Source: Lytechinus pictus (lineage: Eukaryota). From it: a DNA stretch of 64,000 nt. The notes under the pieces were generated by a model, which did not search any database, was not told the DNA's origin, and saw only the letters and a program-made list of their open reading frames with translations. The position numbers and the translations under genes are program-made. Shown piece by piece: positions 4,293 through 54,900 of this stretch (position 1 is the first letter of the stretch; the number at the start of each line of letters is the position of its first letter). The DNA lies in NCBI RefSeq assembly GCF_037042905.1, contig NC_087254.1, positions 11,284,001 through 11,348,000 of the forward strand, read 5' to 3'.

Positions 4293-4455
4293 CAGGCTCT
4301 TGTCTTTCAATCACAGGGTTGTGGGTTTGAATCCCAACCATTGCACATTTTCCGAAAGAAATTTATACAAATTGGGCTGGGGTTATGAAAATAGTGTGCC
4401 TCGGAATAGATTAATTCTAGAAAGATCATTATTATGAAATACTTGAATATCTCAC

Positions 4456-4578
4456 CCGTTTGGCAGTCTTGTCCTACAAAACAGCTTGGGCAGTTACAGG
4501 TATATTGCTGACAGTTTCCCGGAACAGGTTGACATGCACCACCAGCTTCACAAGGATTAGGGTCACATGGATTCATTT
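4456..4578 (-). CDS. Exon 39: 8-Cys EGF ([39 protein letters not shown])
   Basis: aag acceptor, gtgaga donor, 123 nt; the donor implies further exons left of the window. Confidence 0.88.
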
Positions 4579-31500: not shown

Positions 31501-34500
31501 AAGGATATACACACAGAATAAATCATAATAATGATAATAATGATAACAATGATGATAAAGACAATAATAATTACAATAGCGATAATAATAATCATAATAA
31601 TAATCATAAAATAATGATTAAGATAATTCAAACAATTTTTATCATGCTTTTCCCATTTCTTCAGTAGATGCTCAAGGCGATAACGAGTCTACAAAGGACC
31701 ATGACCCTGGTACAATTAAACATTGATCACTATGAAGAGATACATGAAGGTTGATAAGATTACATTACCTGTTTCACAGTTCGACCCTATGAAGCATCCG
31801 TCACACTGGCAGGTATACCCTTGGCACGATCCAGCAAGAGGTGTGCACATACCCCCATTCAAACACGGATTTGGGCTACACTGGTCAATAACTACATGTA
31901 GTTAAGGTACAAATACAGAGAAAGGTTATGAGATAAGCCAAGGTAGCTTTGAGGGTCTGACACTGGGGTAGCTTCAGGGTATTCTGAAAGGGGGCAAAAT
32001 GACCTAACAGTGATTTTTTTTTTGTCAATTCAATAACAGGGTTAATATAGAGACAGGACCAAGACCTGATTTTTATATTTAGCTTTCTTCCCTTTACCAT
32101 TAGATATTGTAGGTTCAGTTCATATTTCATATTATTCAAGAGTATTTTTTCACAATTTTTCAGGAAAAATTAAAACTAATTGAGAGAACGAAAAGTTAAT
32201 ATAATTTCTATTCATAATTTCTCATTTATATAATTGTATTTGTGATCTATGTCCACCTTAGTAATAACCAAGCTTATTGGTGAGCAGTATATTAATGTCT
32301 CAAAATTAAGGATTACACATGTAGATTAACCAGAAGAACCTATATTAACTCTACTGTATGAACAAGTTGCCTATTGTAAAAATCATAATCTAATAATTTC
32401 AAAGAGTTGAAACGATTCTGTTCTTCCTGAATATCATGGTATCATAAAATTGGAAATACACTAAACTGATATTTTCAAAATCGAACTCACAGTTTTCACA
32501 GTTTGTTCCATTGTAGCATCCAACACAAGCGCATTCATAATCAGTACATGATAGTCTACGACAAAGGGCTCCATTCAAGCAACTGTTGGGCTCACATGGA
32601 TTAACAACTGCAGAAAAAGTGAAGCATAGAAATAAAAGAAATTAATAAGCTCCAATCGATCAGTCTGCTGCTAGTTAATGTTTTTTCTGATAATTTTGAT
32701 GATTTGATAAACCCAAATAAAAATAAACCTAATGTATACTGAAACAATCAGTAACTAGGCAAAATCAAGCCCTTTGCAAAAACAAAACTCAGGATTTTTT
32801 GTGTTTTCTGACTGTATACAAGTTGTTCACTTAGAAAATCTGTTACATTTTGAACATTTGCTATTCTGGATAATTGATACAATTCATTTGTGATGAAACC
32901 ATGCTTATTTTTAAGAAAGGACCCTTCTAGAAAGATAGAGAAAAAACAATCTGATATGCTTACATTCCATTTTAGATGTTATTGGAATTGACTAGTATAA
33001 AAAAAAGTCTCTGATCACTGATCTACACTCGAACATATACAACTGATATAATAACCCAGCTTTGTGTAGCAGGTTAAAGTTGGGTATTACATTGACTGAA
33101 TAATACATTCATGAAATAATATTACTAAGGAGTGGGCCATATACACTTTTTAAACAGGTGAGGATTACAATTTTTACATAGCTTTTTTAAATTTAAATCT
33201 TTGCATTATGTAAAATTTACATATAGTGCTATGCAGCTTATGGTGCTACAAAGTAATAAATTCATTGAAACTTACATTCCGAGCAGGTTGGGCCGGAGAA
33301 GCATCCTTGACATTGGCACGTAAAGTTATTACATTCTCCCGCTACCAGACTACACACACCACCAAACTGACATGGGAAACTCTGACAAGGATCAATAGCT
33401 AGATGAGAAAGAAAATTTGAAAAATGCATACTCTCAATGGTTAGACAGAAAAATTATTTTGATAAATGTATATATAAATCAACTTGAAAATTTGTAGTAT
33501 AATTTCTGTAAGTTCATCAAACCAATTATAAATAAGAGAGGTGAGTTTTATCATCAACTACATTTTTTTTCTTTTATTCATCTAAAATCCAATGTAAACC
33601 AAAGATAAATATCTAACATCATATATACATTTATTTACTTCCCGATCTGTATTCGATAATATATTATGTTTAATTATATTACATTATGCTCTACCTTCTC
33701 TATGTTAAACTTCAATTAGTCATTTTTCTTTGTATATAGATGTATATCTGGTTAATAATTGGAAATCTATGGAAAATGTATTGATGTATTACTGATTTAT
33801 GTGACATACAATTATGAAAGTTTTTGTTTGTTATTGTATATATTTTAGAACAAAATGTTCATGCCAAATGAAGTTTGTTAATAAATTCAAATTCGAATTC
33901 AAAATAATGAAATAAATGAGGCTTATGTGAGGTGGTAATTAATGTTGATGTGAAAGTGTCATTGCTCCCTTCCCTTCCTAGATTAATGTAGTTTGGGAAA
34001 TAATTATTTGACCCTTTCCTATTAAGCTCTCATGTGGCATGGTCTATTAAAGGGATGGTCCGGGCTGAAGATATTTCTAAATAAATAGAGTATAATTCAC
34101 AAAGCAAAAGGCTGAAAATCTCATCAAAATTGGATAACAAATAACAAAGCTATTGAATTTTAAAGTTTATCAATATTTTGTGAAAACAGTTATATGCACA
34201 TCGTCATAAATACTCATTAGGTGGACTGATGTCACATCCCCACTTTCCTTTTTCTTTTGTTATTACATGAAATCATAAATGTTTCATTTTTTCATACATG
34301 TGTAAATGATATGTCTCCATTATGATGAAATAAGTTGCGGCAATAAATAACTAATGCACTTAATCAGTTGTCAATGCAACTGTTATAGTTCTTGGTTAAA
34401 AAAAATTGAATAAACATAATAATTTCATATAATAAAATACAAAAGATCAAGTGGGGATATGACATCATCAGCCCACCTAATGAATATTCATACAGACATG

Positions 34501-37500
34501 CCTAGAACTGTTTCACTGGAATAATGCAAATCTTAAAAATTCATGAACTTTGTTATTTGTTATCAGATTTTGATCAAATTGAGTCAGCATTATGCTTTGT
34601 GAATTTTACTCTATTTATTAAGATAAGAATATTTCCAGCCTGGACCATCCCTTTAAATATTTCCCAAGATGTTATCCTAAGTAAATATAATCTATATACA
34701 AGAATATTTGTATATTATGATGCTACATTTGATATCCTACAACTTTAATACTAACTTTCAAGGTTTCAAGATCCAATAATTGTAATTTATTAACTTTTGT
34801 AGTTTTAATAAATTCAGCAAACGTTTTATTCTTGATTTGTTACAGGATCATTTACATTTAAAAAAAAGGAAAAATAAGTTTTATAGTAAATGGAATAATT
34901 CCTATGACATGCTGCAAATAGTGATAAAACAAGATCATGACTGTAAAATTAAGATTTTTCTTAACTGAAACTGAAACACCTGTTGGTGTGACTGGACAGC
35001 ATTGAGTTTCATAACTCTCATGAACCTGGGCCAGTCTGTATCAATCTTGTTACTATTTCACTTCGCTAAGTAAAATGCCTAACTCGTATTCACATCACAT
35101 AAGTATTTTATTTCATCAAGCTATAAAGTTAAAGCTAAATAATGTGCAATGTATGTAACCATCTGGGCGCTTATGCACATTTGTACACCGCACGCAAGCT
35201 AGACTTAGGCCAGGTATGCAACTGACTTTGATTTAAGCAAAGTATTTGTCCCCCCCCCCCAAAAAAAAAAAAACAGTTGATTTGCAGCTTAAGAGTCAAA
35301 CTGCAAAATGGCCCTGGTGATTTTAAAGCAGACTTACGTAAATGACAGAATTGTCCTTCAAAGCAGCCCTGACATTGACATGTATAATCAAAACACGACC
35401 CTGCTAGAGGGCTGCAAGTTGCTCCATTCTGACAAGCGTTGTTATTACATGGATCTTGTACTGAAATTTAAAAAAAATATATAAATAAACGGTTTTCACC
35501 TTATAAGTATGCTGTAGACACTGCAAAGGAGGCACTCAATCAATGTTGATTAAGATATTAGATTGATTGGACAGTCATGTGATTTTTTTCTATTTCACAT
35601 CCGCACTGCTCATCCTGTTATTCTCACTGATTTCATTTTTTTTTTACACGTTTTCACAAAAAAATATCAAACCGTCCGTTGTAACAGATGTTTCAATGAG
35701 TAATTTATCCTATTCTTTGGATCAGAAAGTAAGGATAAAAAATACTAAAATAAAAAGCATAAGGTAGGGGAAATTACATTGTGAGCTCACTCGTGCTCAT
35801 TGCATAATGGAGCATTGTGGCCCAGTGGATTAGTATTCTGACTCTGAAATAGAGGGTCATGGGTTTGAATCCCAGCCATGGCATAATTTTCTTCAAGCAA
35901 GAAATTTATCCACATTGTGCTGGACTAAACCCAGGTAAGGTGAATGGGTATCCGGCAAGATACATTCCTTGAATGCATGAGCGATGAAAGGCAGCTCAAG
36001 CTAAAGCCGGGGTAATAATGATTATAACAATGCCCCTCGGAATATAATATTTCTAGATACATGTAGATGGCACTATATAAATGCCTATTATTATCATTAT
36101 TGATAAAAAAATATTTGTTTCAATCTAAAATGCAAACTAGGGTCAGGGAGAGTGAGAGAGGTTTGTAAAATTGCAGTTCACTGATATTTAGCATGACTAT
36201 TCATCAAAACTATTTCCTGGAGGACATAAGATTCCCAGTTTTTTGCTTAATATTCAAATTCTTTAATCAAGCTCTCAAAAAATGTAATACCATAACTCAA
36301 TTATTTCATTATTTTCATACTTGTTCATACAAAAAATATTGATCTACCCTTTGTAATGGATACTGAATAAATGAGTAGTTTACCCCATTCTTATATCTTT
36401 GGAGTGGAAAATTGGGATTGAAAAATTGCTTAATATTCAATCGCCATCATCAAGCCCTCGAATAGTGTAAGTGGACTCACAAAGTTCGCAGTTAGGTCCG
36501 GTGTAGCATCCTGGACATTGACACGTAGCAACAGAGCACGACAATGGTTGACATGTTCCGCCATTCAAACAGACCTGAGATGAGCATGGATCTGATGCTG
36601 TTAGAAGAGAAAAGTCCAAAGTCACAAACACAAATCACAAGGATTAAAAACCGACAGTTAGAGGGTGATTTCATAAATAAGTGGGCCAATTTGTACATTT
36701 TTGTGTCCATTTAAATAAAGCATTTTGAGCTATTGCTGCCATTGAAATTATCATTAAACCATTCAGATTTTAGTTGGCTACCAAATATCAAAAAAGAGGC
36801 CATAGATGTGCATTTGATGTATCTTAGACCTCATGGTAGTTTTATGTTGGTTTCGATGGCATAAAGTTCAAAGTTTCTTATGTTAACGGGATACCCAAAA
36901 TGTCACAACTTGCCACCATATTTTACTAAATTACCAATAAATGAACATGAAATTCATACTCGTTTGGAACTATATTCATTAACAACGCATGCGTACAAAC
37001 ATAACAATAGACCCTGGTAGCATGCCATTATTGTAAGTCAGAAATACATCATGATTCAATCTATATCTAAAGTGCATCTGTAAGTATTGGGTGTATCTAC
37101 AGCAGATACAGTATTTTATACTATGCAAAAGTTACTTAGTGTATCTGCGGAATGCAGGGAAAACCAGCTTCATTTATATCATGTTGAGATATTTAATAAG
37201 GTTGTGAGAATGATGCTAGCTATATAAGGACATCCTAAAAATTTCTTCACTAAAGAAGAGGACGCATACTTATTTGGCAGTTGTCTCCTTCAAAGCAGGT
37301 TGGACAGCGGCATTCGTACTCCTGGCAAGATAACCTCAAACAAACTCCTCCATTACCACATGGGTTTACAGTGCATGGGTCCAATACTACATCATAGAGA
37401 CAATTAAAAAAGGGAAAATTATGATGATAGAAATTATGGTTTAGTTCTTTCTTTTCATTTTGTTTACTCATGTTCATTTTATGTTCTTGATTGAAGTAGA

Positions 37501-40500
37501 AGAAAAAAGCATAACTATATCTTGGATATTTCTCAACGCATTTCACATTCTAGTTTAGTGACAAAATTTGGGAAATTACTAATATAAATTTGTCTGTCTC
37601 AAATGCACTGGAAGGCTACAATCCAATCCGATCCTAGTCATTGAATTGGTACTACACTCTTTCCTTGTAGTTACAATGTGCTTCACAATTTGCTACATGT
37701 CAGTCACTCAACAGAAACATTTGAAAAAAGACCAGTTCAATTCACTTCTGTAATTATAGCTTATGACTTTTTTTAACAAAAGATGGGCATACGTTAAGTC
37801 CACTATTCTGAAAAAAAATGGCTTTAGATTTAACAAGGATTCTATGAGATACAAGTCCAAGTTCAGGAGAACATTTCATTAAGGTACTCACATGTTTCAC
37901 AGGTCAGTCCAGTGCTGCAGCCCTGACAATTGCAAGAGAACTCTGTACAGGATCCAGGTGTTGCAGTACAGATGCTGTTAAACTGACACGGGTTGGGGTT
38001 GCACTGATTTTGAGCTGGATAAGAAAGACAGTACAGTGTGTATCTTACGGCAGGGAGGTTACCTATTTGTTATGTTAGTCAAATTTCCAGAAACTGAAGC
38101 TACTACTTTTTAAAGAGAAAACAGAAATATTAAGGAGAATGTAGCTCCAAACACCTACAAAAACAATGCATACATAAAACGTTCAAGAAGTTGTTTTATT
38201 GAAATCGGGGGCCATGTAGTACCCAAACTTAAAATATAGATATTCATAAGCAATTGTACAGCAATCATATATATCATTTATCAAAAACAGTGCACCAAAG
38301 TAACTGGGACCAAATATATTACCAATGTTACACATATTATTTGTGTTAGGAGAAAGTAAAATGGAGGTACCGTTTTCACAAAACTGTCCTTGGAAACATC
38401 CAATGCACTGGCATTCAAAGGCATCACACGATCCACTAACAGGAATACAGGCTGCCCCGTTCATACATGGTGACGGTTCACATGGGGTAATAGCTGTAGA
38501 TGTAAATGGAACACACACTACTCTTTTAACGCTGCATTGATTCCTAACAAAATCATTCATTCATGTTTTGTTACATGTTCTATTCAGTTCATATAATCAA
38601 TTTGCCATGGACCCAATGGAGAAAGTAAGATTAATTTACCTTATGAAATCCACTGTTTTGGGACCTCTTGCAGAAAGAGATCTCTTTAAACGCAACTATT
38701 GCAATAAAATGAAACAATCATAATATCCACTTTCTTTTAATTAGTTACTTGAAAATATATGTGTAAGGTTCTTAAAGTTATGCCTGAATGCATCTCTTCT
38801 GTGACTGGGTCTCTTTTACTTTATCATCATTCTCTTCCTCCTCCTGTAAATTAATGCTAAAGTGTTTTGGTTGAAGCAAAATCAGAGATAATGAAGCAAT
38901 GAAATAAATGATGGAATCATTAAAAGTGGTTTACCTCATTTTCAAAATAAAAAGTTTAATTCATTAAACTCACTCTTTGAATCATCATTATGATACTCAC
39001 GTGTAAGACAGTTCTGCCCTGTAAAGCACCCCTGACATGTACAACTATAGTCGGTACAGGTTACAGGACTACACAACCCCTGGTTGCCACAAGGATTGTT
39101 ACTGCAAGGATCCAGCTCTGTGAAAGATGCAAGGAGATATAATATTAGTTTGTGATACAGGGAAACATTTTCATATGGTCATGAATACACAATACAATTA
39201 TTTTTATCCATTCGGGCATACATGAGAAATAATTTGTCCTTTTCATGTTTTTCTGTCAGATTAATGGTAAAAGAAAGTAGTTGCAGCAAGCAATTATTTC
39301 ATGACAAAGTCTTTTAAATCAAGGTTAATTGTCACCATATTATCATATATCTAGATCTGATACATTAATGTAAACTTATCTTTGTGTAATCGGTTAAAAT
39401 CGATAATTCTGATGATCACTAACACAGAAAAGCATATGACAGCGCATTATTATTGCTTGATAAAATACCTGACACTTGATGGAATTCCATGCTTATCTTA
39501 CTCATTTCTCGCAATCATGCATTTTCTTCCAGAGCCATTTTGCACATATTTTTTATTTATACATACAAACACTTGGGTGGTAATTTCATTGGATTCTGTT
39601 TGAACTCTTTTTCAGGTCGTTTCCACAACTGGTGTTTATCTTTAACTTCAAATATTGAATATTCATGTTAGCAGAACATTTAAAAAGGACATAAAATCCC
39701 CATGGTGTAAAGTAAAAAGGGCACATTTCACCTATTACAGCAAATAACACATTGGCTACTGAATTCTATGATTCCTGTAGTCTTTGTACAGGGATCACCA
39801 GATTTTACTTGGCAATTAATTTAGAAATTTAGAAAACTTATTTGTCACATGCTTTGCAGTTCACCCCTATGTGACTGCAACAGAAATGCACATGAGATTC
39901 TCTTCACTTAGCTATGCATACAAGGCTTTGTGTTATTCATCTCGATCACACCATAGGACAGGGGTAATCAACCCCACCCCCACTTGGTTACACGGTCCTT
40001 ATTACAACTGGCAGGCAAAAGATATTCATTCGAGCCAACCCATTCTCAATTTTTAAATTTGATATTGCTGATTGACAAAAATGAATGAATATGATTGACA
40101 ATCTAACACTGATTCTAGGGAGGGTACCTACTGAACTTCCTTTTTCCAAATTGGAAAGATATATCACTACTTTGGAACTATTTTTTTACTGGCGGAAGAA
40201 TTAGGGCCGTTAACTCTCTCAAGTGATGAATTTGATCCTGTCAGGTGTAGTCTTCATAAATGCCGATTTATTTTTAAAATGAGCCATTTGAGGTACCCTT
40301 TTCTGGTCATATATGAAATGTCAGACATATATCCTCTCCACTGGTAGTAAACATTCAACCCTCGGATTTCCTCCTTATTTTCTATGAATTTTTTTAAAGT
40401 GGCACTTTAACACACGAGTCTATGGGAAATGAATTAGGCCTGTGATACCACTTACTGTCTGCGAGAGCAGTGTAACATGGACAGAATATCCTCATACTTA

Positions 40501-43500
40501 CGAGTTTCACAGTTCACCCCTGTGTTGCAATTGCGGCAGATGCAGCTGTACTCGGTGCAAACAGTACTTGACGGTATACATAAACCATCGTTCTGACATG
40601 GATTCGGACTGCATGGTGTTATACCTGGATGAAGGACCAATCATTTAACGTCTTATTATAAAAACATAGCATGTTGAATGAGTTCAATATTACAATACAA
40701 TGAGTTCAATATTATAAATAATTTGATGCTTAAGTTTGGTATTCCCAAAGACATTTTCACATGAAACCAAGTCTACCATAAATTAGCCATAGTATTGAAC
40801 ACATTTATTTGAAGATAAATTAAACAAATATCAAATTGTCAGGGGAAAATGAAAATAAGACATTCAAGCACAGAAATTCTGTCTCTCTTGGGTTAAAAAT
40901 ATTTTGATTTCTTTTGTTACCACGGAAGTCATGAGGATATGGAAATAGGGATTTCCATATTAGTGAGCGTTGGGATATTGGGACACCGCTGAACTATCAC
41001 CAGGGAGTGGAGGATCTGTTGGCACTGCCTGACGGCTAGTGCCAACCTGATAACAAGATTAATGGTGTAAGTGCTTGGAAACACCACATTCAGAGCATTA
41101 TGAATGCAGAATATTGTGCATCTGACTTAGCATATTGGAAAGCTTGTTCGAAGCCAACTTATAGCAGAGCCACACTGGCTTAACTGACTTTAGACGGCCT
41201 TATCTACTGTATTTCCAATGATGTATACCAAGGGTCAGTTTGAAGTCAGTTTAACTGGTTTGATTGTAGCACAATAATCATCTACTCACCCTGTTGACAG
41301 AGGGATCCTTCAACACATGCTGGGCACTGGCATGTGAATGATGTACATGAACCTTGATCAGTGATACAGGTACCTCCATTTGCACAAGGATTGTTAACAC
41401 ATGGATTCAAGTCTGAAAATGTACAATGGTTAATCTCTTATACACTTTGTACGATTATAGATATCACAACTGAATTTTCATGATTCTATATTCACTTTGA
41501 ATCTAGTATTCTGATATCGCTTCAAGTATACTACAACCAGCTTAGATTCTTATTGGTAATGACATTGTCATATAGATCAACCTTACCATGTATACAGGCA
41601 TTAATTACTCATGCTCTATTGTTAATGATATTTTCATAAAATTCCAAATAAATGTACCCCAAGTGCTGGATAGAGTGTGGCCAACTGATAGGTGTGTCAA
41701 ATTTTATCATCAATATTAAACCAGCATGCTCTCAAAATGATGTTCATGTTATCTTCCATACAAACTATAAAGACAAATAAGACAAGCTTTCAAATGAATT
41801 TTATACAAAATAGTGGTGCTAATACTGGTAGTCTGCATGATAAATGTGAAGTTGGAAACAGTGGGAAATCATTTATCAACTTCAAATTCTTACCAGTTCC
41901 CATGTACGTTGTCACCGTTTCCCCCAAAGAGCTCATATCTTCTTTACAATAAAATCAATTCACTATAATCCTCTTCTGTATTTTGTTCTAGTGGATGAAT
42001 ATTGCCCCATTTTCTACATTATATACGTTAACTAGCATACTTAACTGAAATAATGCTTAATAAGGCATTTTCCACTGTGGCTTTCATGCATGAACATACC
42101 TGTTGCACATGTTGATCCCTGAAAGCATGCGTCACAGGTACAGATGAAACCCAAACAGTTGTTTGGATCCTGTTGACAAGTTCCTCCATTAAGACAGGGG
42201 CTATTCGCACATGGATCAATGGCTAGCAGGAAAAAGGAGAGTTATCATTTATACATTTGAACTTGGCATAAATGTTTAATATTAATCATATGGAATCAAA
42301 GGTTGACTGTCCGTCTCCTGAAGACGGACAGTCAACCTGCCCGAAACGTCGAGTCTCTCTACTACTCATCATCTCTACTCGCCGACTCAAGCCAGCGTCT
42401 CCTCACTAGCTCTACTACTCAAGCTGTTCTCAACTCATCAATCTTTCCTGGTTTACAGTCCTTTTCAGGACTACTTTCAAGAAAGAATACTCTACTCTCA
42501 AATCTCCACTTTCTCGCCTATCCATTTCTTCTCTTCTCCTATCCACTGTTTCTACAACACTTCACATGGTGTACCGTAAACCACATCAGCGATTGTACAT
42601 ACCACTATGCAAACCTTCAAACAACATCTCAAAATGACTTTGTTTCCAGATTAATTTTACCTATTGAATGATACTGGGGGTTGAACCAAGGCTCTTCCAT
42701 TCAAGTAAATTTCATTCTAACTTGTAATACAGTTCACTCCTCACCGGCAAACTGCAATTTGACTTCACAGAATAATACATTATGTTGTGTGAGTAATAAG
42801 TGTATTTGCGAATATAACCAACAATCCATGACTCATTGAAAATTTTACATTGATTGGGAAAATAGCATCAGTGACCAACCATCTACCTCATGAACAGGTT
42901 AACCAAGTCACCTACACCACGGCCACCAACATTCTGCCCTCTTATCAGGAGCTTGGCATTTTGAAATAGATAATTCTTATAACATAAGTACACTGTGAAC
43001 GGCCCTTCGACATGTAAGTGATAGGCCTTCTCACCTAAGATTAAAATATTAGATATTAAGAGATGATTAAATGATTCCAATTTTTTTCAATTTTCATCAT
43101 GTGTAATTTTACTTATGAAGTGATGAGTTCAGTATTCTAACAAGTCATGATATTGAGGTGGTGGTTTTCAGAACTGTTCCAGATATACCTTGGACAGGTA
43201 ATTTTACTGATGCCCTTGCTGATGTGCATTGTTTGAATACTTATGGTGAGAGACTGCTGATTTGACAGGCTCCATTGATACATGAACTGGGATTGCATGG
43301 ATTCGTGGAGTAGGAGAGAGAGATTGTGAGAGAGGGGGGGGGGGGGGCAAATATCAATGCTGATGTATATTATCTGAATACTTACGGATGTCACAGTTCT
43401 GACCAGTGTAGCACAAGTTGCAAAGACAACTGTACTGTGTGCATGGTGAGAAACTGCTGATCTGACAGGCTCCATTGATACATGGACTGGGGTTGCATGG

Positions 43501-46500
43501 ATTCTGACCTGTTAAAAGAAAGGGAGTGGAGATTGAGAGAAAGAGAGAGAGAGAGAGGGGGGGAAGAACGGGGGGAGATAACAAGATACTTTAAATACTT
43601 ATCGACCGATCTCAACCAACGTGTAAACAAGCACTACAATACACAATTTAAAGTTGTGATATTCTTAATAAACTTTCACCATTGTTTACGATTTTCAAAT
43701 GAATAATGTTTAGGTGTAAATGAATATATACTGTATGTCGAGGTATGTACACTATACGGAGTATAATAATCTGTAAACATTATTTTAGTGGACTTACCAA
43801 CAGTGCAACGGTCCCCTGTAAAACATCCTTGACACTGACAGGTGAAGTCTGTACATGAACCATCGATTGCTGAACACTGTCCTCCATTCTGACAAGGAAA
43901 ACTACTACACGGATTCATCACTGAGAATGGAAAGACAGAAAGATCAATAATTATCATGGCATGAAACACGAATGAGATGGAGGAAAAAAGCTGTTTGTAA
44001 TAATAATAATAATAATAGGCATTTATATAGCGCCATCTATCTAGAAATATTCTATTCTGAGGCGCACAAGAAAAGAAAGAAAGTTTGGATGAGTGTCAAA
44101 GTGCCAATAACTAATACTGTTAGAAAAGGTAAGACTTCAGTTTAGATTTGTAGGTCTCCAGTGATGGTATCATTCTTAAATATAACGGCAAATTATTCCA
44201 GAGAGAAGGTGCTGAGGCAGAGAAAGCTCGCGCACCATGTGCTACACGTGTCTTGGGAGTCTTAAGAAGTTGCTGGTGTGATGATCTTAGGCTACGAGCT
44301 GGTGTATAAGGCATGACAAGGTCTTGTAGATATGTTGGTGCCAAACCATTTAACACTGTAAGTGACGAATGACATTGTGCATGACTAGTGACCCTTTATT
44401 GAGCTATATGACATAACCGTATATCCCTATGCAGCTGATATAATACTTATGAACATGTTTCAATTGAGCACAACGTCATGCTTAACTTTGCAAACAGCTT
44501 TATGAAACGCCCACCAGTCTCTTAAATAGGGCACAGACTGAGGTGTTTAATGTTATCATTTATGATCCCCACTTTGTGTATCCTCAGTAGTCATGGGGTC
44601 ACCCTTTCTGATTCAACATGCTAAGAAGTATATCCCAATTATAGGTAACAACTCAATTCTTATTTTCGTAGTAAGCTGGAAAATATCTTCCTCTGACTTC
44701 TAAATTACATCACTGCATCTGATAGGGACTGGATAGTCATAAATACTATTTAGTCAGAAAACTAGCCGATTCATCGATAGGAAACATGGATCGTAGGGGT
44801 GTTTTGGTCTAGTGGTTACAACTCTCATCTTTCAATCAGAGGGACGTGGGTTTGAATCCCAGCCATGGCGTGTTTTCCTTCAGCAAGAAATTTACCCACA
44901 TTGTGCTGCACTTGACCCAGGTGAGGTGAATGGGTACCAGGTAGGATTTATTCCCTGAATGCTTTAGCGCCTATACGATGGCTCAGCTACAGCCGCGGTA
45001 ATAATATGATCCCAAGTATCAAGTGCAGTATATGGAATTATAGTAGCTGCACTATATAAATGGAACATATTATTATTATTATTTATTTCAAAATATCAAA
45101 TAAGATTTTTTTTACAAATGATCAGGAATGACAGTGAATACTAACACGTGCTGCAGGTAGGTCCTACAAAACACCCAGTACACACACAGGATGTAGACGT
45201 GCAATCGGGTGACATCAGGCATGATCCCCCATTTCTACATGGGTTGTTTGTCTGGCACAGGTCAATTCCTAAAAGCACAATATCATAGAAAAAGATATGT
45301 AATTTTTCATTACAATTTTTGTACAATGTAGCTATCCAAATAGAAAAATGATGAGAAAAAGCATTTCATAGATAAGATAAGATTTTATCAAATGTTATCA
45401 ACCCGCAATCAGGAGTATGATATTCTCAACAAGAACCAATTTACAATGATGAGCATGTGTATAAAATTAATATATTTTCAATAATAAATATAAATTTTTC
45501 CATTGTGAAAATACATGTTGCAAAAGGTTAATAGAGCAACAACATTAACAAAACCCACTATAAACTAATTTTAAAGTTGTGTTAAGCACAATTGCATTGT
45601 AGAATGCGTATCGATGTTTAACCACTCTCCCACTTCTGGTAGTTTCATTCACTCTGGTAACTAAATTTTCTACATAAACAGATAAAAATTGTAAAAATAA
45701 CAAAAACCCCACAAAAACAATAACCGTTAGTCCAAGACATATCAGAATACAATAAAAACCACAATTCAGCAACATGACAGTTACTTTTGATAAGAGGAAT
45801 GCCAACAAGAATGGTTTACAAACATTGTCTAACATGTAAGTGGTAGTCGCATCTTCAAACTTGGAAATCATGAATATACCATATATTAATTTAAATTCAA
45901 AGTTAGAATTAGGCACTTACTCTGTGAACATGTATTTCCAATGAAGCACACATCACACTGACATACAAAGTCAGTGCATCCGATACCCTGTGGAATGCAG
46001 ATCCCATTGTTCTGACATGGGTTGGGATTCTGGCATTGGTTTATACCTAGTGATATAAAAAAGATCATTATATAGTTCAGGAATAATAAAGGTTTGACCT
46101 CAAATTTGAAGTCAATGACCTGAAAGTCATCTGAGTTCAATCTCCCTACCTCTTGATCTTAAAGTTAAGGTTATTACAACGGCTATTGCTGGTAAATGTT
46201 TAATGCCTTAGTAATATTTCTTTAATTATAACAATCAGGACAGTCACTTTATGACTATTAATATTTTTTTTCAATCTCTCCATTTTAGATTTATGTAAAT
46301 TAGATATTGCTCTACTTATCAGATCTTTCTGAAAGTTTGGTAATTCATTTTTGGGACTAAACAGTAATGCAGTGCACAAAGAAAATTATATCACAAAGTT
46401 TTAGGGGTTCACCCACAAAATCAGTCATTTTCCTTGACTACTGTAAGTTATTACAATTCTTGAAACATTTTACAGCATATTGATGAATTATATTAAAATA

Positions 46501-48869
46501 AAAAGAAAGGCGAGACACAAAATCACACGAAGGCTTTGGCACACTAAAACTATTCTCTTAATCAATGACAACATTAATGCAGGAATCAGTTTTCTCCCTT
46601 TTTTAGCTCTTAAGGCATTCCCTTCATTTCTCTCAATTTTTAGATCTGAAATGGACTACTCAATAAAAGTAAATTAGACTATTTAAACAAAAAATTGGAA
46701 TAAGTTTCCCAAATCTCTAACCAAAAACGGTTATCAATATTTAACTCCCCAGCATTCAGCATATACTGTATTATATGATGTATCTGTAGATTCCCTCCAA
46801 GAGTCCACTCTAACATTTTAAAAGACCTTTGCAAGTTCATGAAAGTAAAAATAAATGTTCACAATTGTCACTTGGCCAAAGACATCTCTAAACCGCACTA
46901 CACAACATTCTCAATCTCTCTAAATCCATCGTCACCCCCAAACCATCACAATAGATGACACATATTTTGGGGAGGCCTTTCTTGTGTTTCAGATCTCCGC
47001 GAACCCCTTTTAATCACTGGTCTCAATCAAGACTCGGCTGCATCACACAAATACAGATGCAAAATGAAATGCATTAATGATATATTTCATATACACCTTC
47101 AAAATAACGAAATTGTTAAATTACTTACGGCTTGAACAGGTTAAGCCAGTGAAGCAGGGTGGGCAGTCACAGATAGTTGAGGTACACTGACCATTGGTAA
47201 AACAGGTCCCACCATTCAGACATGGGTTACTAGTAGAACACAAATTATTACCTAATGTGCAAAAAAAACATCGGAACGTTTGTATGGCATATCAAAATTT
47301 TGAATTTTTATCACTCAGATTCAATAACAGTACAGCAATTCATTGTTCTTGAACTCTACTAAAATCATTGTTCCCGCCTCTGTACTACTCAAGTTGTGAT
47401 ATATCCTCGCTTACCATATACATTTCTCATTCACACAATACACTTGTAACATGTAAAGAAATGAGTTTCTTATTGACTTTATGGTACATGAGAAAGTGCA
47501 CAGTCTCCACCATCTAAATGATTCAGAAGAAAATGCCATAACAAAGAATGTTTGTTTACAAATCAGCAATTCGTGAAAATGGGAAAACATATCAGGCAAA
47601 TGAGGGCAGGTACACTAAAATTATCTGTACATGGATTCAAGATAAATCCAGATCAGTTGTGAATAGTGACCAAACTCTGAATTCAATTTCAATTCTAAAG
47701 ATTGATTTTTTAACTCTAAAAGTACATTTAGATTAAAATACTCACAGATTTAATCCTAATCCAGAGGTCGACTGGTTACTATTCACATCTGATCCAGATT
47801 TAATTAAAATCCATGTAATTCAGTGTTTATCAGTTGAAAACTTATCTCACTCATTAATCCTCCTGTACGAAAAGGTACAAAGATCTATCGCCTAGCATAT
47901 AAAATACACAAGGGTGACAGGCTATTTTGCCCTCATGACAGCCCAAATCACCTCTTATATTCCCCAAATTTCTGTTTCTGTTTATGGTAATTCGTGTAGG
48001 AACTCGGCAGGACAGCGTTTTGCTGGTAAATGCCAAGCTGGCATATAACCAATTACCTACAAAACATTTTACGTCTAGGTTAATTAGTCATAGTGGCTGA
48101 TGTTATAGATGACAGATATCACTCTCGGGCCTTTTTATCAAAGTGGAGACAATGGCAGAGTTGGGATTTGAACTCACAACCTTGCGATTATGAGTCCAAT
48201 GCTCTAACCACTGGACCACATGACCTGTGTGGTCCAGTGAATGCTTTGGGTGACCATTTTTTTTAGAGTTGCCAAAAATCTGCCACAAAGTCAAGAATGG
48301 TTTAAGAAATCAATATTCTACAATACACATACACTAGAATTTTTTTCAGAGTTGCCAAAAATCTGCCACAAAGTCAAGAATGGTTTAAGAAATCAATAAT
48401 CGACAATACACATACACTAGAATCATGAAATTCGCATCTAAGCCTACCATATCACTGCTTAATGCACAAAGGGTATCCCTAGAAATGTAAGAGAGAGCCC
48501 CCCAAAATTTAGCAATTGCAACAATGTGATATTAATAATGGCCCCCAAATTATTTGCTAGTCTGCTGTCACCCTTACCTATCTCGCATCTGTTACCATTG
48601 TAGCACGGAGTACAGCTACAAGTGAAGGTGTTTGACTGGAAGTTAGGGGTACAGGTCCCTCCATTCAGACAAGGACCCCATCCACATGGATCAGTTGCTG
48701 GAGGAAAAACAAAATTTCATTTTACATTTTGAAAATAATTCATATAAATATATCATCTTTTTTGTCAATTCCATTTGTTATATAATAGATCAACAGGATG
48801 TCATATATACTTTATGGATGTCCCTGCACAATTGTTTCCAACCCCTCCTTACCCTTTTACCTATCTATC

Positions 48870-48900
<31 letters not shown>

Positions 48901-51900
48901 TTTTTCTATCTATCTATCATTGTACATTTCACAATTTGCCAACATAATAATAATAATAGCCAATTTTTATAAAGCGCTTTTCCCTGAATGGCTCAAAGCG
49001 CGTTACAGCATATTATTACCCCGGTCATTGGATTCATTTCAATCCCGCACGAAAAGTGCACAATTTCCACTCCCTGGGGAGCATTCCTTGCATTCATCGC
49101 AGCCTCATTATGGCGCTGGCAAAATCAAACATACAATATCTTTTGCATCCTACCGGGTACCCATTTAGCACCTGGGTCAAGAGTGGCAAAGTGTGGATTA
49201 ACGCCTTGCCAAAGGACGCTAGACCGCGGTGGGATTCGAACACACGACCCTCTGTTTACAAGGCGAGAGTCAGAACCACTACACCACGGCTCTTCTTATG
49301 GTAACCTCTTTAAAATCAGAACAAATGGATGAAGATACATGTATATAGTAATAGTAGATATGTAAACATATAAAATTCATAGGAAACTTGATTTCATTTT
49401 ATCTCCAAAGGTAGAGATGGTACACATCTGCAACTGCCTGAAGGTTATAAGGAACTTCATCGGTTACACAGCAATGATAGCACAAAGATGTGGCAAATGT
49501 GGACATATACGTCATAAATGAAATGTCCTTTGAACTACTATTAAGTCTGCATGTGTCTCAATAAAATCAAATTATCAATTCAATTCAATTCAAGTCAACA
49601 ATACCTTTATTCAAATCAGATCTCTCAATACAAACAGGAGTACAGTTACAGAATACAGGTATATAGTACCATGTAACTTCTCAGGTTTTATCCTTCTTAT
49701 TCGATCATATTGTATCATAAATGTGTAGTTCAATATGTGTAGTTAAAAAATGTCGGTTGAAATAACTTTGATAGAAAAACATAACAATGAACAAAAGAAA
49801 TACTAACATACAATAATTACAACAGAATTAAAAAGAACTATTGACTTCTTACTTGCTGTCCACTGTAGCTGCCATCCATTGGCAGAACCTGTAGCATCCG
49901 ACCTGAAAAGCATCCAGACCGTATCAGTGTTCAAACTGAACGCATTGGGCACCACACTCCCACTGAACTGATGCAAGATGCCATCGACGGGTTGGAAACT
50001 CGTGGGAACAGTGAGTCCGATCCCGACGTAAAGCTTGTCATCGACGTCGATGCTGAAGGTGACCTGGAATGACAACCTGATCGACGTCGCGGTTTGGATG
50101 TAGAGCTGGTACATTTGGGAGAAGCCATTGGGGTAGTTGTTGGGGAAGGCAGGGGAGGAAAAGAATGTGAGCTGACAGGTGGATGAAGGGTACCCAAAAC
50201 ATCTGTTTGCGGCATTGAAAGAACCTAAATAAAGACAAGACCAAATATTGATTCATTGTTACATGAATTTCTGTAAATATTATCAAGATTACTCAAAGTC
50301 AAAACTTATGAAATCGGCTTACCCTTTATACAGTCATAACCCTCCATTGCTAAAATCACTATAGAAAGCACATCTACTTTTTTTTCCTTCTCTAACTCGT
50401 CTTCTTTTTCTTCTCCTTTTCCTTCATATTTCCTTTTCCCGTAATTCCTTACTTAATTATTAGCATTACGTTCAATATCATCATTGTCACATCACAACCA
50501 CCATCAATCATCACCAGCATTATCATAATCATCATCATCAGTATCATGATGATCATGATCATTGTAACCATGCAATTCACTATCATGACCAATGGCATCT
50601 TGGCTTATATCACCATGAATATCATGATCATAATAATCATCACCACCATCGTCAACACCAACACCATCATCACCTATTCTCTATCAATATGACCAATACC
50701 ATCTTTGCTGCAATCATCATATAACATCAACACTATCATTGTCATCACCATCATCACCATTATCATCACTATCATCACGCTTATCATCACCATCATCACA
50801 ATCATCACCATCATCTTCATTAACATCCTCACCATCATTAGCAGCAGCATCATGATCATCATCACCATCATCATCAGTACCACATCATCAGTACCATATT
50901 ATCATTATCATCATCATCATCATCACCACCATCACCATCATCATCATCGTCATCGATCAGCATTTACTATTGACCATCACCACCAGCACTACTACCGGGC
51001 CATTGACTCACCGATTACCACACAGTGGAGTCGGCCGCCATTTCATTTCATTTTTCATTTCATTTATTTAGTCCAAATTCTCATTAAAAAACATACAACA
51101 TACAAATCAAAGAATACACTATATACAAATAAAGATACAAAAATAGAAATACATTTAACAAGAGAATATTCTCGTTCTCGTTCAAAAATACGTTAACGAG
51201 TACGAGTCCATGCACACGTAATCCAGACGGCCAGCTGAGAGCCGCTGGGACGTTAACAGACGTCGCTGGGAGCGATGTTCGGGCTGCCCCCGGGGGCGGG
51301 CTGCCGCATTTGTAACTAGCTCAACACTGAAAAACTTACCAAGTTAAATGCATAAAATCAGTCTCTCTTTGCATTACATAACATCTCCTTCTTCTTGCAA
51401 TGAACACCAATCGCATAAATACTTTCATACTCCTTTTTATCACGCTGATATCATTAATTCCATAATAATATAGGCCACTACTAGTACTACATAAATCAAA
51501 TTTTAACAACCGATTTAGTTCTTTCTTACCAGTAAACGACGGGAAACCAAATAACAAGAAATGTTTATCGGAAAACCTGCCACAAACCACTCATCCTACG
51601 AACGAGGTTATAATACGACCCTCTTATCGTCAGCATCATTTGTTTTGCACTCGTCGTCAACTCCATCTTCAAGGTCGCCAAGCGTCATCATTGTCACCAT
51701 AAACCATCAAATGTATTACTTATTAGTATCTGTCATCGTCATGTGACGCCATCATCAAAATCAAAATCATTATCATCGTCGACATTATCATCACCTTCAT
51801 TTCCATCACCATGCATCAACAACTTTCATCAGAATCATCATCACAATCGAGGCATCGTCATAGCATCACATCCATAGGCGGATCCAGGGGGCCCGAGTGG

Positions 51901-54900
51901 CTCGGGCCCCCTTATTGGCGGAGCAAAAAAAAAGAAAAAAGGGGGGAAAAAGAAAAGAAAAAAAGGGAAAAGAGAAGGGGAAACATAAGAGGAGGAAGAC
52001 GAGCTAATATAATAAGATGAGGGGAAGACTTGGAAAATAATTTTAAAATCTTCCATGTCGGGATATATAATTTTCGCTCGGAGCTTAAAATATAAAATTT
52101 TGAAGTAAATATACAAAACATATTTCAGCTCGGAAATTGAACTTTCATTATTTTGTTTGATTTACAGATTTATTTTTAAAAAGTGCTCTGTAAAAATTTA
52201 TGTTTTATGATCTGAATATTAACATTTTCTGCTTGCGCTGCGCGCTCGCAAAACTTTATTTGTAAGGTACCTATTATTCTCCTGTATTCCATAAAGTTAT
52301 TAAAATGTCCCTATGCAGGTCAGATTGTCAAAACGTATCAGCTAGCGCTTCACGCTCGCATTTTGATTGGTGAGTTATGTATAATTCTAAAACAAACTAT
52401 TTAAAATCCCCATTTGATGACAGTTTATCAAAACTTTCGGCTCGCGATTTCCGCTCGCATTGATTGTTGAAAAATATTAACTCATGCATCTTATTCATAA
52501 TTACAAAAGTGCTTTAAATGTCCAGTTTTCAGGCCATAAAATTAACAGACTTCGCGCTCTCATGCTTAGGAAGAGAAATAGGAAGATATAGTCATCATTT
52601 TTATATGATGACACAATTTCCTGATAAAATGTCCCGGTCCTATGTCAAAACTCAAAGTAACAATAATGAAACATATCAGCTCTTTTTTAACTGTGATCCA
52701 TATCCACCTCACAATTTTCCAACAAAGTGCTTGAAATACAGAGCCTTTTTCAGATCGGAATATCATATATTTTTAGCTCGCGCTTTGCGCTCGCTTTATT
52801 GATTTTCAACTTAAGAAAGGTATTTAGACTGATACCCAAATTCTAGGTAGAAATCTGAAATACGCGTTTATTCAGATACACAGGTTGTTCTCTATTCAAA
52901 TCATTATCCAGTTTCAGATCACACTATCAAAAATTGTCTGTTCGCGCTTTGCGCTTGCATTATTAATATGGGAAAATTTCCAATTACTCATCCATTTTAT
53001 GATTAATAAAATATGAATAGAGTGTCCAGAATTTTTTCGCTCGCGCTTCGCGCTCACATCAATTGTTTGGTTATATACTCATCCTTTCCACGATTACAAA
53101 AAGTGCTTATCATTTCCATTCTTCAGGTAGAAATGTCAACATTTTCAGCTCGCGCTTCGCGCCCGCATTATTTGATAGTTAAAATAAACGTCTTCACGGC
53201 TTACAAGCAGCTGTTAACAGATTCTTTTTTGATCAGATCAAAACGTATATTAAAATAAATAAAAAAATTCTGCTCGCACTTTGCGCTCGCATTATTAATG
53301 TAAGATGATTTCCAATTATTCATCCTTTTCATGATTTACAAATCATGAATAGCTGATGTCCAATTTTAAGGTTTGGATCTCGAATTTCATGGCTAACAAA
53401 CTGCCGTTAACAGATCCTTTTTTTTTGGTGATTGATTGATTGGTGGGGATTTTTTACCTGATTGCTAAGAAAGCATGAATGCTTGTAAGCAAGCAACCAG
53501 AGGACCGACGGCTTAAGGTCCTCTCCGAAGGACCTGGTAATGAGGATTAATGCCTTACCTAAGGGCACTAGCGCACCAAGTGGGAATCGAACCCGGGTCA
53601 CCGGAATACGAATCCCCCGCTCTACCGACTGAGCTATCGCGCCTTCAGATCAAAACGTATATTAAAAATTTATGCTCGAGCTTCGCGCTCGTAGCAATTA
53701 TTTAGTTGGATACACATCTTGTTTAGGATCATAAACATTGCCCAAAATGTTTGAATATTAAGACAAAATACATAAAATAAACAAAAAGCTCGCACTTCGC
53801 GCTCGCACTTTTTAAAAAGGCTTATANNNNNNNNNNNNNNNNNNNNNNNNNNNNNNNNNNNNNNNNNNNNNNNNNNNNNNNNNNNNNNNNNNNNNNNNNN
53901 NNNNNNNNNNNNNNNNNNNNNNNNNNNNNNNNNNNNNNNNNNNNNNNNNNNNNNNNNNNNNNNNNNNNNNNNNNNNNTAGGACTACGTACCCCTTCAAAG
54001 AAATAAACAAAAATTAACTTCGAGCTGCCGATCGGGGAAAATATGGCTGAAAAAAAAATCCGCTCCCCCCCCCCCTATTGGCGAAGGCTGGATCCGCCCC
54101 TGCTATTAGGACTACCCCTTCAAAGAAACAAACAAAAATTAAAACTTCGAGCGGCCGATCGGGGAAAATGTGGCTGACAAAAATATTCATCATCAATATC
54201 AACGTTAACATTATCGACATCCTTGATCATCATCATCATCAACAACAACAACATCACCACCGTCATCGCCGTTGTCATATACCATCATCATAATCATCAT
54301 ATGCTCACGACAACTACTACAATCCATTGACTCACCTACTTCCATGCAGTCGAATCCCATTCTATTAGTATTAAAACATTGACAAGCGAAGTTAGGAGTC
54401 CTTCCCGGTCTTTCGTAGCAGAACCCCAATCCACTGCAGGGATTGGAAGTACACGCTGTTTAAACATAAACGGGGAAAGATTTAATATAATTGATTTATT
54501 AAATACAAGATTTATTAAATAGTTGCAGTTTATCCCTTTCGTAGCCGCGGAACGATTTTCAAATTGGGGGGGGGGGGGCTGACCATGCAAATAAATCACA
54601 ATCATATGGTCATTTTTACGTTTTTGTACACGGTTTTGGAAAAAAGTGGGGGGCTGAAGCCCCCCCCCCCCCCTCCGCTCCGCGGCCCCTTCAAGTAGCT
54701 GACAATGATTGTTAGGTAAAGGAAAAAAAAATTCAGACGATATACTCGTTTATTTAGCACTAACTTCAAATCTTCTCAACAATTACTTGATCTAAAAAAA
54801 TCAAACAAGCATTACACTTATTTTTTAAATCAAGATCAGAAGTCAACATTTCAAATTTTCCACAAGTTTTTCATTTTTCCATTTTTTTTTCAAGACTTGA

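What the first reader, a model, noticed from the sequence alone, without database searches (positions are those of the whole stretch)
48578..48697. First array module has 7 cysteines and lacks exactly the one that would have no upstream partner
Seen: the module right after the CUB domain keeps Cb ([12 protein letters not shown]) but has Ser at the Ca position. The codon is TCA, two changes from any Cys codon, so it is not a simple point mutation or base-call error. The isolated EGF before the CUB (exon 2) has neither extra Cys. Inference: an intra-module Ca-Cb bond predicts 6 or 8 Cys, while a chained bond predicts Cb-only at the array start and Ca-only at its end. An alternative is that the odd Cys forms an inter-chain dimer bond, as in teneurin EGF repeats.
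Basis: partly seen in the sequence, partly recalled or inferred. Interest (0 to 1): 0.82.

Follow-up and report, generated by a model that had tools for sequence, protein, structure and literature searches.

The report
Disulfide-stapled EGF array: first module
In this probable sea-urchin gene, a chain of at least 36 small EGF domains seems to have each domain tied to the next by an extra disulfide bond, and the missing cysteine in the first domain is what that arrangement predicts; related proteins show the same pattern at both ends of their chains.

Summary
Window 48578-48697 (minus strand) is a phase 1-1 exon. It encodes the first EGF module after a CUB domain. It has 7 Cys: Ser (TCA, 48635-48633) sits where the next 35 modules have the extra Cys "Ca", and the second extra Cys "Cb" is kept.

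The chained-bond reading is strongly supported. The end of this gene's array lies off the window, so I tested the prediction on relatives.
- Every array whose start is seen begins with a Cb-only module.
- Nearly every array whose end is seen finishes with a Ca-only module, followed by ordinary 6-Cys EGFs or a membrane anchor.
- This holds in echinoderms of five classes and three hemichordates. Two-module Cb|Ca pairs occur in rotifers.
- In 6193 adjacent module pairs, Cb(n) and Ca(n+1) co-occur 62 times. Cb(n) lacks Ca(n+1) 6 times, and four of those have a partner Cys elsewhere in module n+1.
- Within single modules, Ca and Cb are uncoupled 68 times.

Cb is next to the "packing aromatic" and Ca is in the major beta-turn. 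These are the two sides of the canonical tandem-EGF interface.

The teneurin-like dimer and intramodule alternatives are disfavoured. No bond was observed directly. I found no paper describing this staple. The same reader also filed a note on the whole array (s1-324872).

The parts
60259..60370 (-). Candidate exon 1: start codon plus a signal-peptide-like hydrophobic stretch; ends in phase 1 at AAG|gtaaga
   Evidence: inferred from ORF, hydrophobic core and donor phase only
54336..54455 (-). Exon 2: ordinary 6-Cys EGF module, with neither Ca nor Cb
49853..50224 (-). Exon 3: CUB domain with 2 Cys
   Evidence: Pfam PF00431, E=1.8e-10
48578..48697 (-). Exon 4 = array module 1 (the finding): 7 Cys, Ser (TCA 48635-48633) at Ca, Cb present (TGC 48605-48603)
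24572..47251 (-). Array modules 2-25 (exons 5-28), one 117-129 nt phase 1-1 exon each, every one with 8 Cys. Exon coordinates: 47129-47251, 45921-46046, 45146-45268, 43798-43920, 43386-43508, 42100-42222, 41290-41412, 40502-40624, 39001-39117, 38371-38493, 37892-38014, 37270-37386, 36481-36597, 35338-35460, 33276-33398, 32491-32607, 31769-31891, 30117-30239, 29004-29126, 28140-28265, 27465-27593, 26583-26699, 25032-25154, 24572-24694
13828..24571 (-). Largest intron of the array (10.7 kb); no further EGF-like open segment found in it
4456..13827 (-). Array modules 26-36 (exons 29-39), all with 8 Cys. Exon coordinates: 13705-13827, 13222-13344, 12497-12619, 11519-11641, 10931-11053, 8389-8511, 7722-7844 (GC donor), 6659-6781, 6225-6341, 5668-5790, 4456-4578. 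The last visible module still has Cb, so the chain must continue or be capped left of the window

Best explanation
The gene on the minus strand encodes signal peptide - EGF - CUB - at least 36 EGF-like modules. Each module is one phase 1-1 exon. The spliced model has 1668 residues and 295 Cys, and it is open at its 3' end.

Each array module keeps the six canonical EGF cysteines and adds two more:
- Ca lies five residues before C4, in the turn of the major beta-hairpin.
- Cb lies three residues after C5, six before C6, directly before the conserved aromatic residue.

The best reading is that Cb of module n forms a disulfide with Ca of module n+1. The array would then be a covalently stapled rod. 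Module 1 has no upstream partner, so it carries Ser at Ca and keeps Cb. The terminal module, not in this window, should carry Ca but not Cb, or be followed by a lone capping Cys.

The staple sits at the interface that holds Notch and fibrillin tandem EGFs in a line. These modules lack the calcium-binding consensus. The bond therefore probably gives a calcium-independent stiff stalk that carries the EGF-CUB head; at the roughly 2.5-3 nm per EGF module that I recall, 36 modules would span about 100 nm.

Because every internal exon carries both Ca and Cb and has symmetric phase, duplicating or skipping an exon keeps the disulfide register.

Shown: the sequence pattern and its comparative regularity. 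Inferred: the bond itself, the rigidity and the stalk role.
For: (1) Window: 35 of 36 modules have Ca, all 36 have Cb, and the only Ca-less module is the first. The C6-to-C1 linker is exactly 6 residues in 35 of 35 junctions. An aromatic follows Cb in 33 of 36 modules. The total Cys count is odd, at 295.

(2) Relatives from a profile search of 1.84 billion representatives and three word-indexed searches:
- An echinoderm block, in proteins that sources name hyalin or mucin-like, reads 7-8-8-8-8-7 in Amphiura, Holothuria, Apostichopus, two Lytechinus species, Patiria and Asterias. All 46 Cys are invariant.
- Hemichordates: P0117 and P0124 are FN3-[7-(8)x6-7]-membrane anchor. P0452 is signal peptide-[7-8-8-7]-membrane anchor.
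- Capped variants: P0069 and P0448.
- The crinoid fragment P0416 starts -b ab ab.

(3) Two-module Cb|Ca pairs sit inside 6-Cys arrays in the rotifers Seison and Brachionus and in ENA proteins.

(4) Statistics on 297 non-redundant proteins, 7610 modules:
- Adjacent pairs: Cb(n)&Ca(n+1) 62, Cb only 6, Ca only 17, neither 6108 (Fisher p about 3e-125).
- Most discordant pairs have a partner Cys shifted by one residue, in the linker, or doubled at C1.
- Within a module, Ca-only occurs 44 times and Cb-only 24 times, against 47 with both.
- All 17 chains start without Ca.

[quoted passage not shown] Cb is the residue before that aromatic. Ca lies in that turn: in the AF2 model the strands are 54-57 and 65-68 and Ca is residue 62.

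(6) AF2 of the Lytechinus block gave mean pLDDT 87.3. Three of its modules superpose on Notch1 EGF11-13 (2vj3) at 2.9 A, TM 0.76.
Against: - No disulfide was observed. The structure tool gives no coordinates, so S-S distances could not be read.
- pTM of the six-module model is only 0.39.
- The end of this gene's own array is outside the window.
- One sea-urchin protein family (P0292, P0302) has a single Cb-bearing calcium-type EGF followed by a 6-Cys module. A few rotifer modules have a lone Ca.
- P0507 (Apostichopus, partial model) ends its 8-Cys run with a Cb-bearing module followed by a 6-Cys EGF. P0163 (Ptychodera, a broken model) starts with an 8-Cys module. Both may be gene-model artefacts.
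- The sequence pattern alone cannot tell Cb-Ca(n+1) from another Cys of the C-terminal sub-domain bonding to Ca(n+1).
Confidence: 0.82

Rival explanations
1. The chain is inter-module, but with different wiring. C5 and Cb (a C-x-x-C pair) bond to each other, and C6 of module n bonds to Ca of module n+1, or some other reshuffle occurs within the C-terminal sub-domain.
For: It gives the same 7-(8)n-7 parity pattern as the favoured model. C5-x-x-Cb is invariant in the window.
Against: - It would break the canonical C5-C6 bond.
- At the array end, the Cb position is most often Gly, the residue that occupies this position in Notch EGFs. That fits a simple add-on Cys.
- Cb, not C6, neighbours the packing aromatic that touches the next module's turn.
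- The AF2 secondary structure is that of a normal EGF.
Confidence: 0.08
2. Ca and Cb bond within each module. The odd cysteines of the first and last modules are free, pair with each other, or bind something else.
For: Most modules carry both Ca and Cb (35 of 36 here). Sequence alone shows no bond.
Against: - It does not predict which Cys is missing at which end, yet 17 of 17 chains lack Ca first, and 15 of those 17 lack Cb last in the automatic count (16 with P0124 checked by eye); the seventeenth has a cap Cys.
- Two-module pairs have Cb in one module and Ca in the next, with no intramodule partner.
- Ca-only and Cb-only modules occur 68 times.
- From general EGF geometry (my own knowledge), the hairpin turn and the residue after C5 of one module lie at opposite ends of the module.
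Confidence: 0.05
3. The odd cysteine of module 1 makes an inter-chain disulfide, giving a covalent dimer as with the free cysteines of teneurin EGF2 and EGF5.
For: Teneurin EGF2 and EGF5 each hold a free Cys used for covalent cis-dimerisation (PMC9058538). A 7-Cys EGF is formally compatible with this.
Against: - In relatives the odd modules are always the two ends of an 8-Cys run, in a fixed orientation, so each chain has an even total.
- Caps made of a lone Cys replace a missing end module.
- The matches of relatives to Pfam EGF_TEN are far below its threshold (27-59 bits against a cut-off of 65).
Confidence: 0.04
4. The Ser is a chance substitution, an assembly error, or a sign of a decaying gene.
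For: It is a single residue in a single genome copy.
Against: - Two base changes separate TCA from a Cys codon.
- 39 exons splice into an open frame of 1668 residues with every other Cys kept and consensus splice sites.
- The same first-module state is found in all relatives.
Confidence: 0.01

Closest known systems
Calcium-binding EGF rods of Notch and fibrillin (for example Notch1 EGF11-13, PDB 2vj3)
   Same: - The module sequence is closest to Notch and Delta EGFs.
- The linker is 6 residues.
- The packing aromatic four residues after C5 is conserved.
- The AF2 model superposes over three modules at 2.9 A.
- The interface described in PMC4826273 is where Ca and Cb sit.
   Different: - There is no calcium-binding consensus: 0 of 35 linkers fit it.
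- The residue before the aromatic (Gly in the Notch EGFs aligned) is Cys, and the next module's hairpin turn carries a Cys.
- The interface is therefore presumably held by a covalent bond rather than by calcium plus packing.
Integrin beta-subunit I-EGF domains (8 Cys; pattern 1-5, 2-4, 3-6, 7-8)
   Same: They are EGF-derived modules with 8 Cys. The review PMC12383024 gives that bonding pattern and describes a disulfide spanning the loop between EGF1 and EGF2. By the usual equivalence to EGF cysteines (my own knowledge), the extra bond 1-5 ends in the hairpin between EGF C3 and C4, and one end module is atypical.
   Different: By the usual description (my own knowledge), the I-EGF partner is an extra Cys at the module's own N-terminus, just after the previous module's last Cys, so the bond counts as intradomain. 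Here the partner lies inside the previous module, six residues before its C6. There is no sequence relationship beyond the EGF fold.
Laminin-type EGF (LE) modules, 8 Cys
   Same: They form rod-like tandem arrays of 8-Cys EGF-derived modules.
   Different: From established knowledge, the LE extra pair (C7-C8) follows C6 and is intramodule. Pfam Laminin_EGF did not match the window modules.
Teneurin EGF2 and EGF5 (odd-Cys EGFs)
   Same: They are EGF modules with an odd number of cysteines that are functional, not errors (PMC9058538).
   Different: Teneurin's free Cys makes inter-chain bonds. Here the odd modules are the two ends of a run, and the parity closes within one chain.
Unannotated 8-Cys EGF runs in echinoderm proteins that sources name hyalin or mucin-like, and in hemichordate membrane proteins (P0008, P0064, P0112, P0116, P0126, P0132, P0173, P0117, P0124, P0452, P0069)
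   Same: They have the same Ca and Cb positions, the same short linkers of about six residues and the same 7-(8)n-7 layout. The window's array is a member of this module class.
   Different: Those runs have 4-8 modules and sit behind HYR or FN3 domains. The window's run has at least 36 modules behind an EGF-CUB head. No protein with more than 8 chained modules was retrieved.

Membership tests
EGF-like domain (Pfam PF00008, hEGF type) | Six Cys with C1-C3, C2-C4, C5-C6 spacing, a C-x-C motif at C4/C5, and Gly three residues before C6 | tested here: met
   Pfam EGF hits at or just below the cut-off for single modules. A profile of the modules hits Notch1 and DLL1 EGFs in the PDB at up to E=4.5e-31. 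All six positions are conserved in the 36 modules, five as invariant alignment columns and C3 present in every module though offset by one column in one; Gly is invariant.
Calcium-binding EGF (cbEGF) | D/N-x-D/N-E/Q directly before C1 | tested here: not met
   None of the 35 inter-module linkers fits this N-terminal consensus. The residue before C1 is mostly Pro. The second element of the consensus, D/N after C3, was not counted.
Laminin-type EGF (LE) | 8 Cys with the extra pair C7-C8 downstream of C6 | tested here: not met
   The extra Cys lie between C3 and C4 and between C5 and C6. There was no Laminin_EGF Pfam hit.
Integrin I-EGF | 8 Cys with an extra Cys N-terminal to EGF C1, bonded to a Cys in the C3-C4 hairpin | tested here: not met
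   There is no Cys in any of the 35 linkers or before C1. A hairpin Cys is present (Ca).
Teneurin-type dimerising EGF | An internal EGF with one free Cys that forms an inter-chain bond; membership of Pfam EGF_TEN | tested here: not met
   EGF_TEN scores of relatives are 27-59 bits against a cut-off of 65. Odd modules occur only at the ends of runs. Inter-chain bonding itself cannot be tested with these tools.
Stapled 8-Cys EGF run (the class proposed here) | First module Cb only, internal modules Ca+Cb, last module Ca only or a lone capping Cys | tested here: inconclusive
   The start and 35 internal modules are met in the window. The end is outside the window. The full pattern is met in relatives.
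Stapled 8-Cys EGF run (the class proposed here) | An actual Cb(n)-Ca(n+1) disulfide | not testable with these tools
   Structure prediction returns no coordinates. No solved structure carries these Cys.
CUB domain | Match to Pfam PF00431 above its threshold | tested here: met
   41.5 bits against a cut-off of 21.4, E=1.8e-10. Only the first CUB Cys pair is present.

The most novel reading that the evidence does not exclude
There is a previously undescribed class of EGF arrays in which every junction is covalently stapled, Cb(n) to Ca(n+1), at the canonical packing interface. This would give a calcium-independent rigid rod. Its length could change by exon duplication or skipping without breaking the disulfide register. 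The window holds by far the longest example (at least 36 modules). The same staple seems to have arisen or persisted as isolated pairs in rotifers.
Probability: 0.6. Interest if true: 0.7.

Novelty: new variant of a known kind. Interest (0 to 1): 0.62.

Why it matters
- It would add a third way of stiffening tandem EGF arrays, a covalent inter-module staple, beside calcium binding and the laminin/integrin-type extra loops.
- It explains why 7-Cys EGF modules at the ends of runs are functional rather than errors. That matters for annotating the many EGF-rich genes of echinoderms and hemichordates.
- It gives a simple rule for reading odd-Cys EGFs: look at the neighbouring module.
- It offers a natural design for long, rigid, calcium-independent protein spacers.
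- It is directly testable with a small recombinant fragment.

Tried and rejected
- **Reading S-S distances from the AF2 model.** The tool returns only confidence and secondary structure, and no coordinate file appears in /data. The bond is therefore not shown. The second AF2 job was not used because it could not add distances.
- **Finding this gene's own protein or an orthologue, to see the last module.** None of the 507 retrieved proteins has more than 8 chained modules. The end of the array stays unknown.
- **A looser statistic counting any extra Cys on either side of a junction.** It was swamped by unrelated oddities, such as the fish EYS "CC" at C1 and parsing of C-x-C-x-C. I dropped it in favour of the position-specific count.
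- **Literature searches for inter-EGF, inter-module or inter-repeat disulfides, and for odd-Cys EGFs in echinoderms.** They found nothing on this staple. The "extra disulfide" of the mussel protein Pvfp-5beta is just the sixth canonical bond.
- **Earlier notes of the scan.** The near-place look-up was empty.
- **Pfam.** It gives only generic EGF for the modules.

Full report
**1. What is at the coordinates**

On the minus strand, 48697..48578 is a 120-nt exon with a good acceptor (cctccag|CA) and donor (ATAG|gtaagg), in phase 1-1. It encodes one EGF-like module with seven cysteines.

It is two changes away from TGT or TGC. The Cys called Cb is TGC at 48605-48603.

The exon upstream (49853-50224) is a CUB domain (Pfam E=1.8e-10) with two Cys. 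The exon before that (54336-54455) is an ordinary six-Cys EGF. A plausible first exon with a start codon and a signal-peptide-like stretch lies at 60259-60370 and ends in the right phase.

**2. The array**

Downstream of module 1 there are 35 further one-exon modules, reaching down to 4456-4578.
- All are 117-129 nt and phase 1-1. All have consensus splice sites except one GC donor, after the exon at 7722-7844.
- The 39 exons splice into an open frame of 1668 residues with 295 Cys, an odd number.
- In the module alignment (A1) five of the six canonical Cys columns are invariant. C3 is present in every module, offset by one column in one module. Cb and a Gly are also invariant.
- Ca is Cys in 35 modules and Ser only in module 1.
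- Spacing is rigid: Ca-x4-C4, C5-x2-Cb, Cb-x5-C6, and exactly six residues between C6 and the next C1 in 35 of 35 junctions.
- The residue after Cb is Phe, Tyr or Trp in 33 of 36 modules.
- None of the linkers fits the calcium-binding consensus.
- The last visible module still has Cb. Left of it there is only a LINE-type element, so the end of the array is outside the window.

**3. What the modules resemble**

Pfam sees only generic EGF. A profile of the modules hits Notch1 and DLL1 EGFs best among solved structures. No solved chain has Cys at either extra position. In those alignments Cb replaces the Gly that precedes the conserved aromatic, and Ca falls in the loop before the Y/F-x-C4 strand.

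**4. Test of the prediction in relatives**

A profile search of 1.84 billion cluster representatives and three word-indexed searches gave 507 proteins. I classified every EGF module by position. Ca was scored as a Cys 4-5 residues before C4. Cb was scored as a Cys 6 residues before C6.

Modules with these Cys are rare. They cluster in Ambulacraria (echinoderms and hemichordates).

(a) *Echinoderm block.* Proteins that sources name hyalin or mucin-like carry a block reading Cb-only, four modules with both, Ca-only, then ordinary EGFs. The species are Amphiura filiformis, Holothuria leucospilota, Apostichopus japonicus, Lytechinus pictus (two copies in P0276), L. variegatus, Patiria miniata and Asterias rubens. 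In the alignment of seven of these proteins, all 46 Cys (7+8x4+7) are invariant (A2).

(b) *Hemichordates.*
- Ptychodera P0117 and Glandiceps P0124 are FN3-[7-(8)x6-7]-membrane anchor.
- Glandiceps P0452 is a complete signal peptide-[7-8-8-7]-stalk-membrane anchor protein.

(c) *Capped variants.*
- Ptychodera P0069 runs 7-(8)x7 and then has a lone Cys seven residues after the last C6.
- Saccoglossus P0448 has a lone Cys two residues after the C6 of a preceding calcium-type EGF, then three 8-Cys modules, then a lone Cys.

(d) *Crinoid.* The fragment P0416 starts Cb-only, both, both.

(e) *Outside Ambulacraria.* Two-module units, Cb-only followed by Ca-only, are embedded in ordinary 6-Cys arrays in the rotifers Seison nebaliae and Brachionus calyciflorus and in unnamed ENA proteins. 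In bdelloid rotifers the first Cys is shifted by one residue, or the partner is a doubled Cys at C1.

**5. Numbers**

The set is 297 non-redundant proteins with 7610 complete modules.

| Adjacent pairs | Count |
|---|---|
| Cb(n) with Ca(n+1) | 62 |
| Cb(n) alone | 6 |
| Ca(n+1) alone | 17 |
| Neither | 6108 |

Fisher p is about 3e-125. An earlier count on 263 proteins gave 62, 0, 4 and 3787.

- Four of the six "Cb alone" pairs have a doubled Cys at C1 of the next module.
- Most "Ca alone" pairs have a Cys one residue off the Cb position, or a Cys in the linker.
- Within single modules the two Cys are uncoupled 68 times: 44 Ca-only and 24 Cb-only, against 47 with both.
- All 17 chains start without Ca. 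Fifteen end without Cb. A sixteenth (P0124) does so by eye, and the seventeenth has the cap Cys.
- These counts are not independent events, because orthologues share history. The pattern still holds across at least three Ambulacrarian architectures plus the rotifer pairs.

**6. Exceptions, recorded as such**

- One sea-urchin family (Diadema P0292, Lytechinus P0302) has a single calcium-type EGF with Cb, followed after a longer linker by a 6-Cys module.
- A few bdelloid modules have a lone Ca.
- P0507 is a partial Apostichopus model. Its last 8-Cys module is followed directly by a 6-Cys EGF. Two symmetric exons present in its paralogue P0173 seem to be missing.
- P0163 is a Ptychodera model with an apparent frameshift. 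It starts with an 8-Cys module.

**7. Geometry**

[quoted passage not shown] This gives the rod shape.

Cb is the residue just before that aromatic. In the AF2 model of the Lytechinus block (built on the 7-row alignment A2; mean pLDDT 87.3, pTM 0.39), the major hairpin strands of module 2 are residues 54-57 and 65-68, and Ca is residue 62, in the turn. Three modules of the model superpose on Notch1 EGF11-13 at 2.9 A with TM 0.76.

The two extra Cys are therefore placed on the two faces of the canonical junction. From general knowledge of the EGF fold, the hairpin turn and the start of the minor sheet of one module are at opposite ends of that module. That argues against an intramodule bond. 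I could not read coordinates, so this step is inference.

**8. Mechanism proposed**

Each junction carries a forward staple, Cb(n) to Ca(n+1). Together with the fixed six-residue linker and the retained aromatic, this should lock the tilt of each junction without calcium. The array would become a stiff stalk; at the roughly 2.5-3 nm per EGF module that I recall, 36 modules would span about 100 nm.

In hemichordate relatives such runs sit between a head domain and the membrane. Here the head is EGF-CUB, and the C-terminal end is unknown.

Every internal exon carries one Ca and one Cb and has symmetric phase. Duplicating or skipping an exon would therefore keep all cysteines paired, which may explain how the run grew to 36 or more modules. 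Function beyond "rigid spacer" is not addressed by any data here.

**9. Rivals**

- The same parity pattern would arise if another Cys of the C-terminal sub-domain, for example C6 with C5-Cb forming a C-x-x-C bond, made the forward link. I rate this low, because the Cb position is most often the canonical Gly in last modules and the rest of the module is a normal EGF.
- Intramodule bonding fails to predict the polarity of the end modules, the two-module pairs and the caps.
- A teneurin-like inter-chain bond (PMC9058538) fails for the same reasons.
- Error or decay is excluded by the intact 39-exon frame and by the recurrence of the pattern in relatives.

**10. Novelty**

Four full-text searches found no description of a disulfide linking consecutive EGF domains at this interface. 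The nearest described case is the integrin beta I-EGF. A review gives its 1-5, 2-4, 3-6, 7-8 bonding pattern and describes a disulfide spanning the EGF1-EGF2 loop. By the usual equivalence (my knowledge), its extra bond ends in the same hairpin but starts from an extra Cys at the module's own N-terminus.

I class the finding as a new variant of a known kind. The library lacks most subscription journals, so the novelty is provisional.

That note is not independent support. Another note calls this genome a sea urchin (s1-306802). I did not verify this, but it fits the restriction of long 8-Cys runs to Ambulacraria.

Noticed in passing
window 2-2845 (+): An uninterrupted 948-codon open frame runs in from the left edge. 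It has an endonuclease/exonuclease/phosphatase domain and a reverse transcriptase (Pfam E=1.1e-08 and 4.3e-38). It is a seemingly intact LINE-type element in the intron after array module 36, on the opposite strand.
   Followed up: partly
window 56070-57248 (+): A 393-codon open frame with the C-terminal part of a reverse transcriptase (Pfam E=1.9e-24). It is a truncated retroelement inside the candidate first intron.
   Followed up: partly
window 53571-53642 (-): ARAGORN calls a tRNA-Thr (CGT) in intron 2, next to the N run at 53827-53977. Translated segments at about 4310-4360 and 49200-49300 resemble the one at this site, which might mean tRNA-derived SINE copies rather than a working tRNA gene.
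   Followed up: no
window 7716-7721 (-), the donor of the exon at 7722-7844: This is the only non-GT donor in the gene: CAAG|gcaagt, a GC-AG intron.
   Followed up: no
P0292 residues 3577-3651 (Diadema setosum); P0302 residues 3405-3480 (Lytechinus variegatus): A conserved calcium-type EGF carries Cb (C-x-C-x-S-C-Y-S-G), but the next module, after an 8-residue linker, has only six Cys. This is a lone Cb with no visible partner, and an exception to the staple rule in sea urchins.
   Followed up: partly
P0277, P0283, P0287-P0291 (bdelloid rotifers); P0282, P0294, P0296, P0298: Variant staples. In one family the first Cys sits two residues after C5 (C-x-C-P-C-G-F) and the next module has Ca. In another, Cb is followed by a module with a doubled Cys at C1. 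This suggests that the junction bond arose more than once, with different geometry.
   Followed up: partly
P0117 (Ptychodera flava) residues 556-637: The gene model joins an FN3 - 8-Cys EGF run - membrane anchor protein to the start of an amiloride-sensitive sodium channel domain (Pfam ASC, E=1.6e-20). This is either a fused gene model or an unusual architecture.
   Followed up: no
P0276 (Lytechinus pictus) residues 271-513 and 1708-1950: There are two nearly identical copies of the 7-8-8-8-8-7 block in one 1965-residue protein that its source names hyalin-like. This is either a recent internal duplication or an assembly duplication.
   Followed up: no
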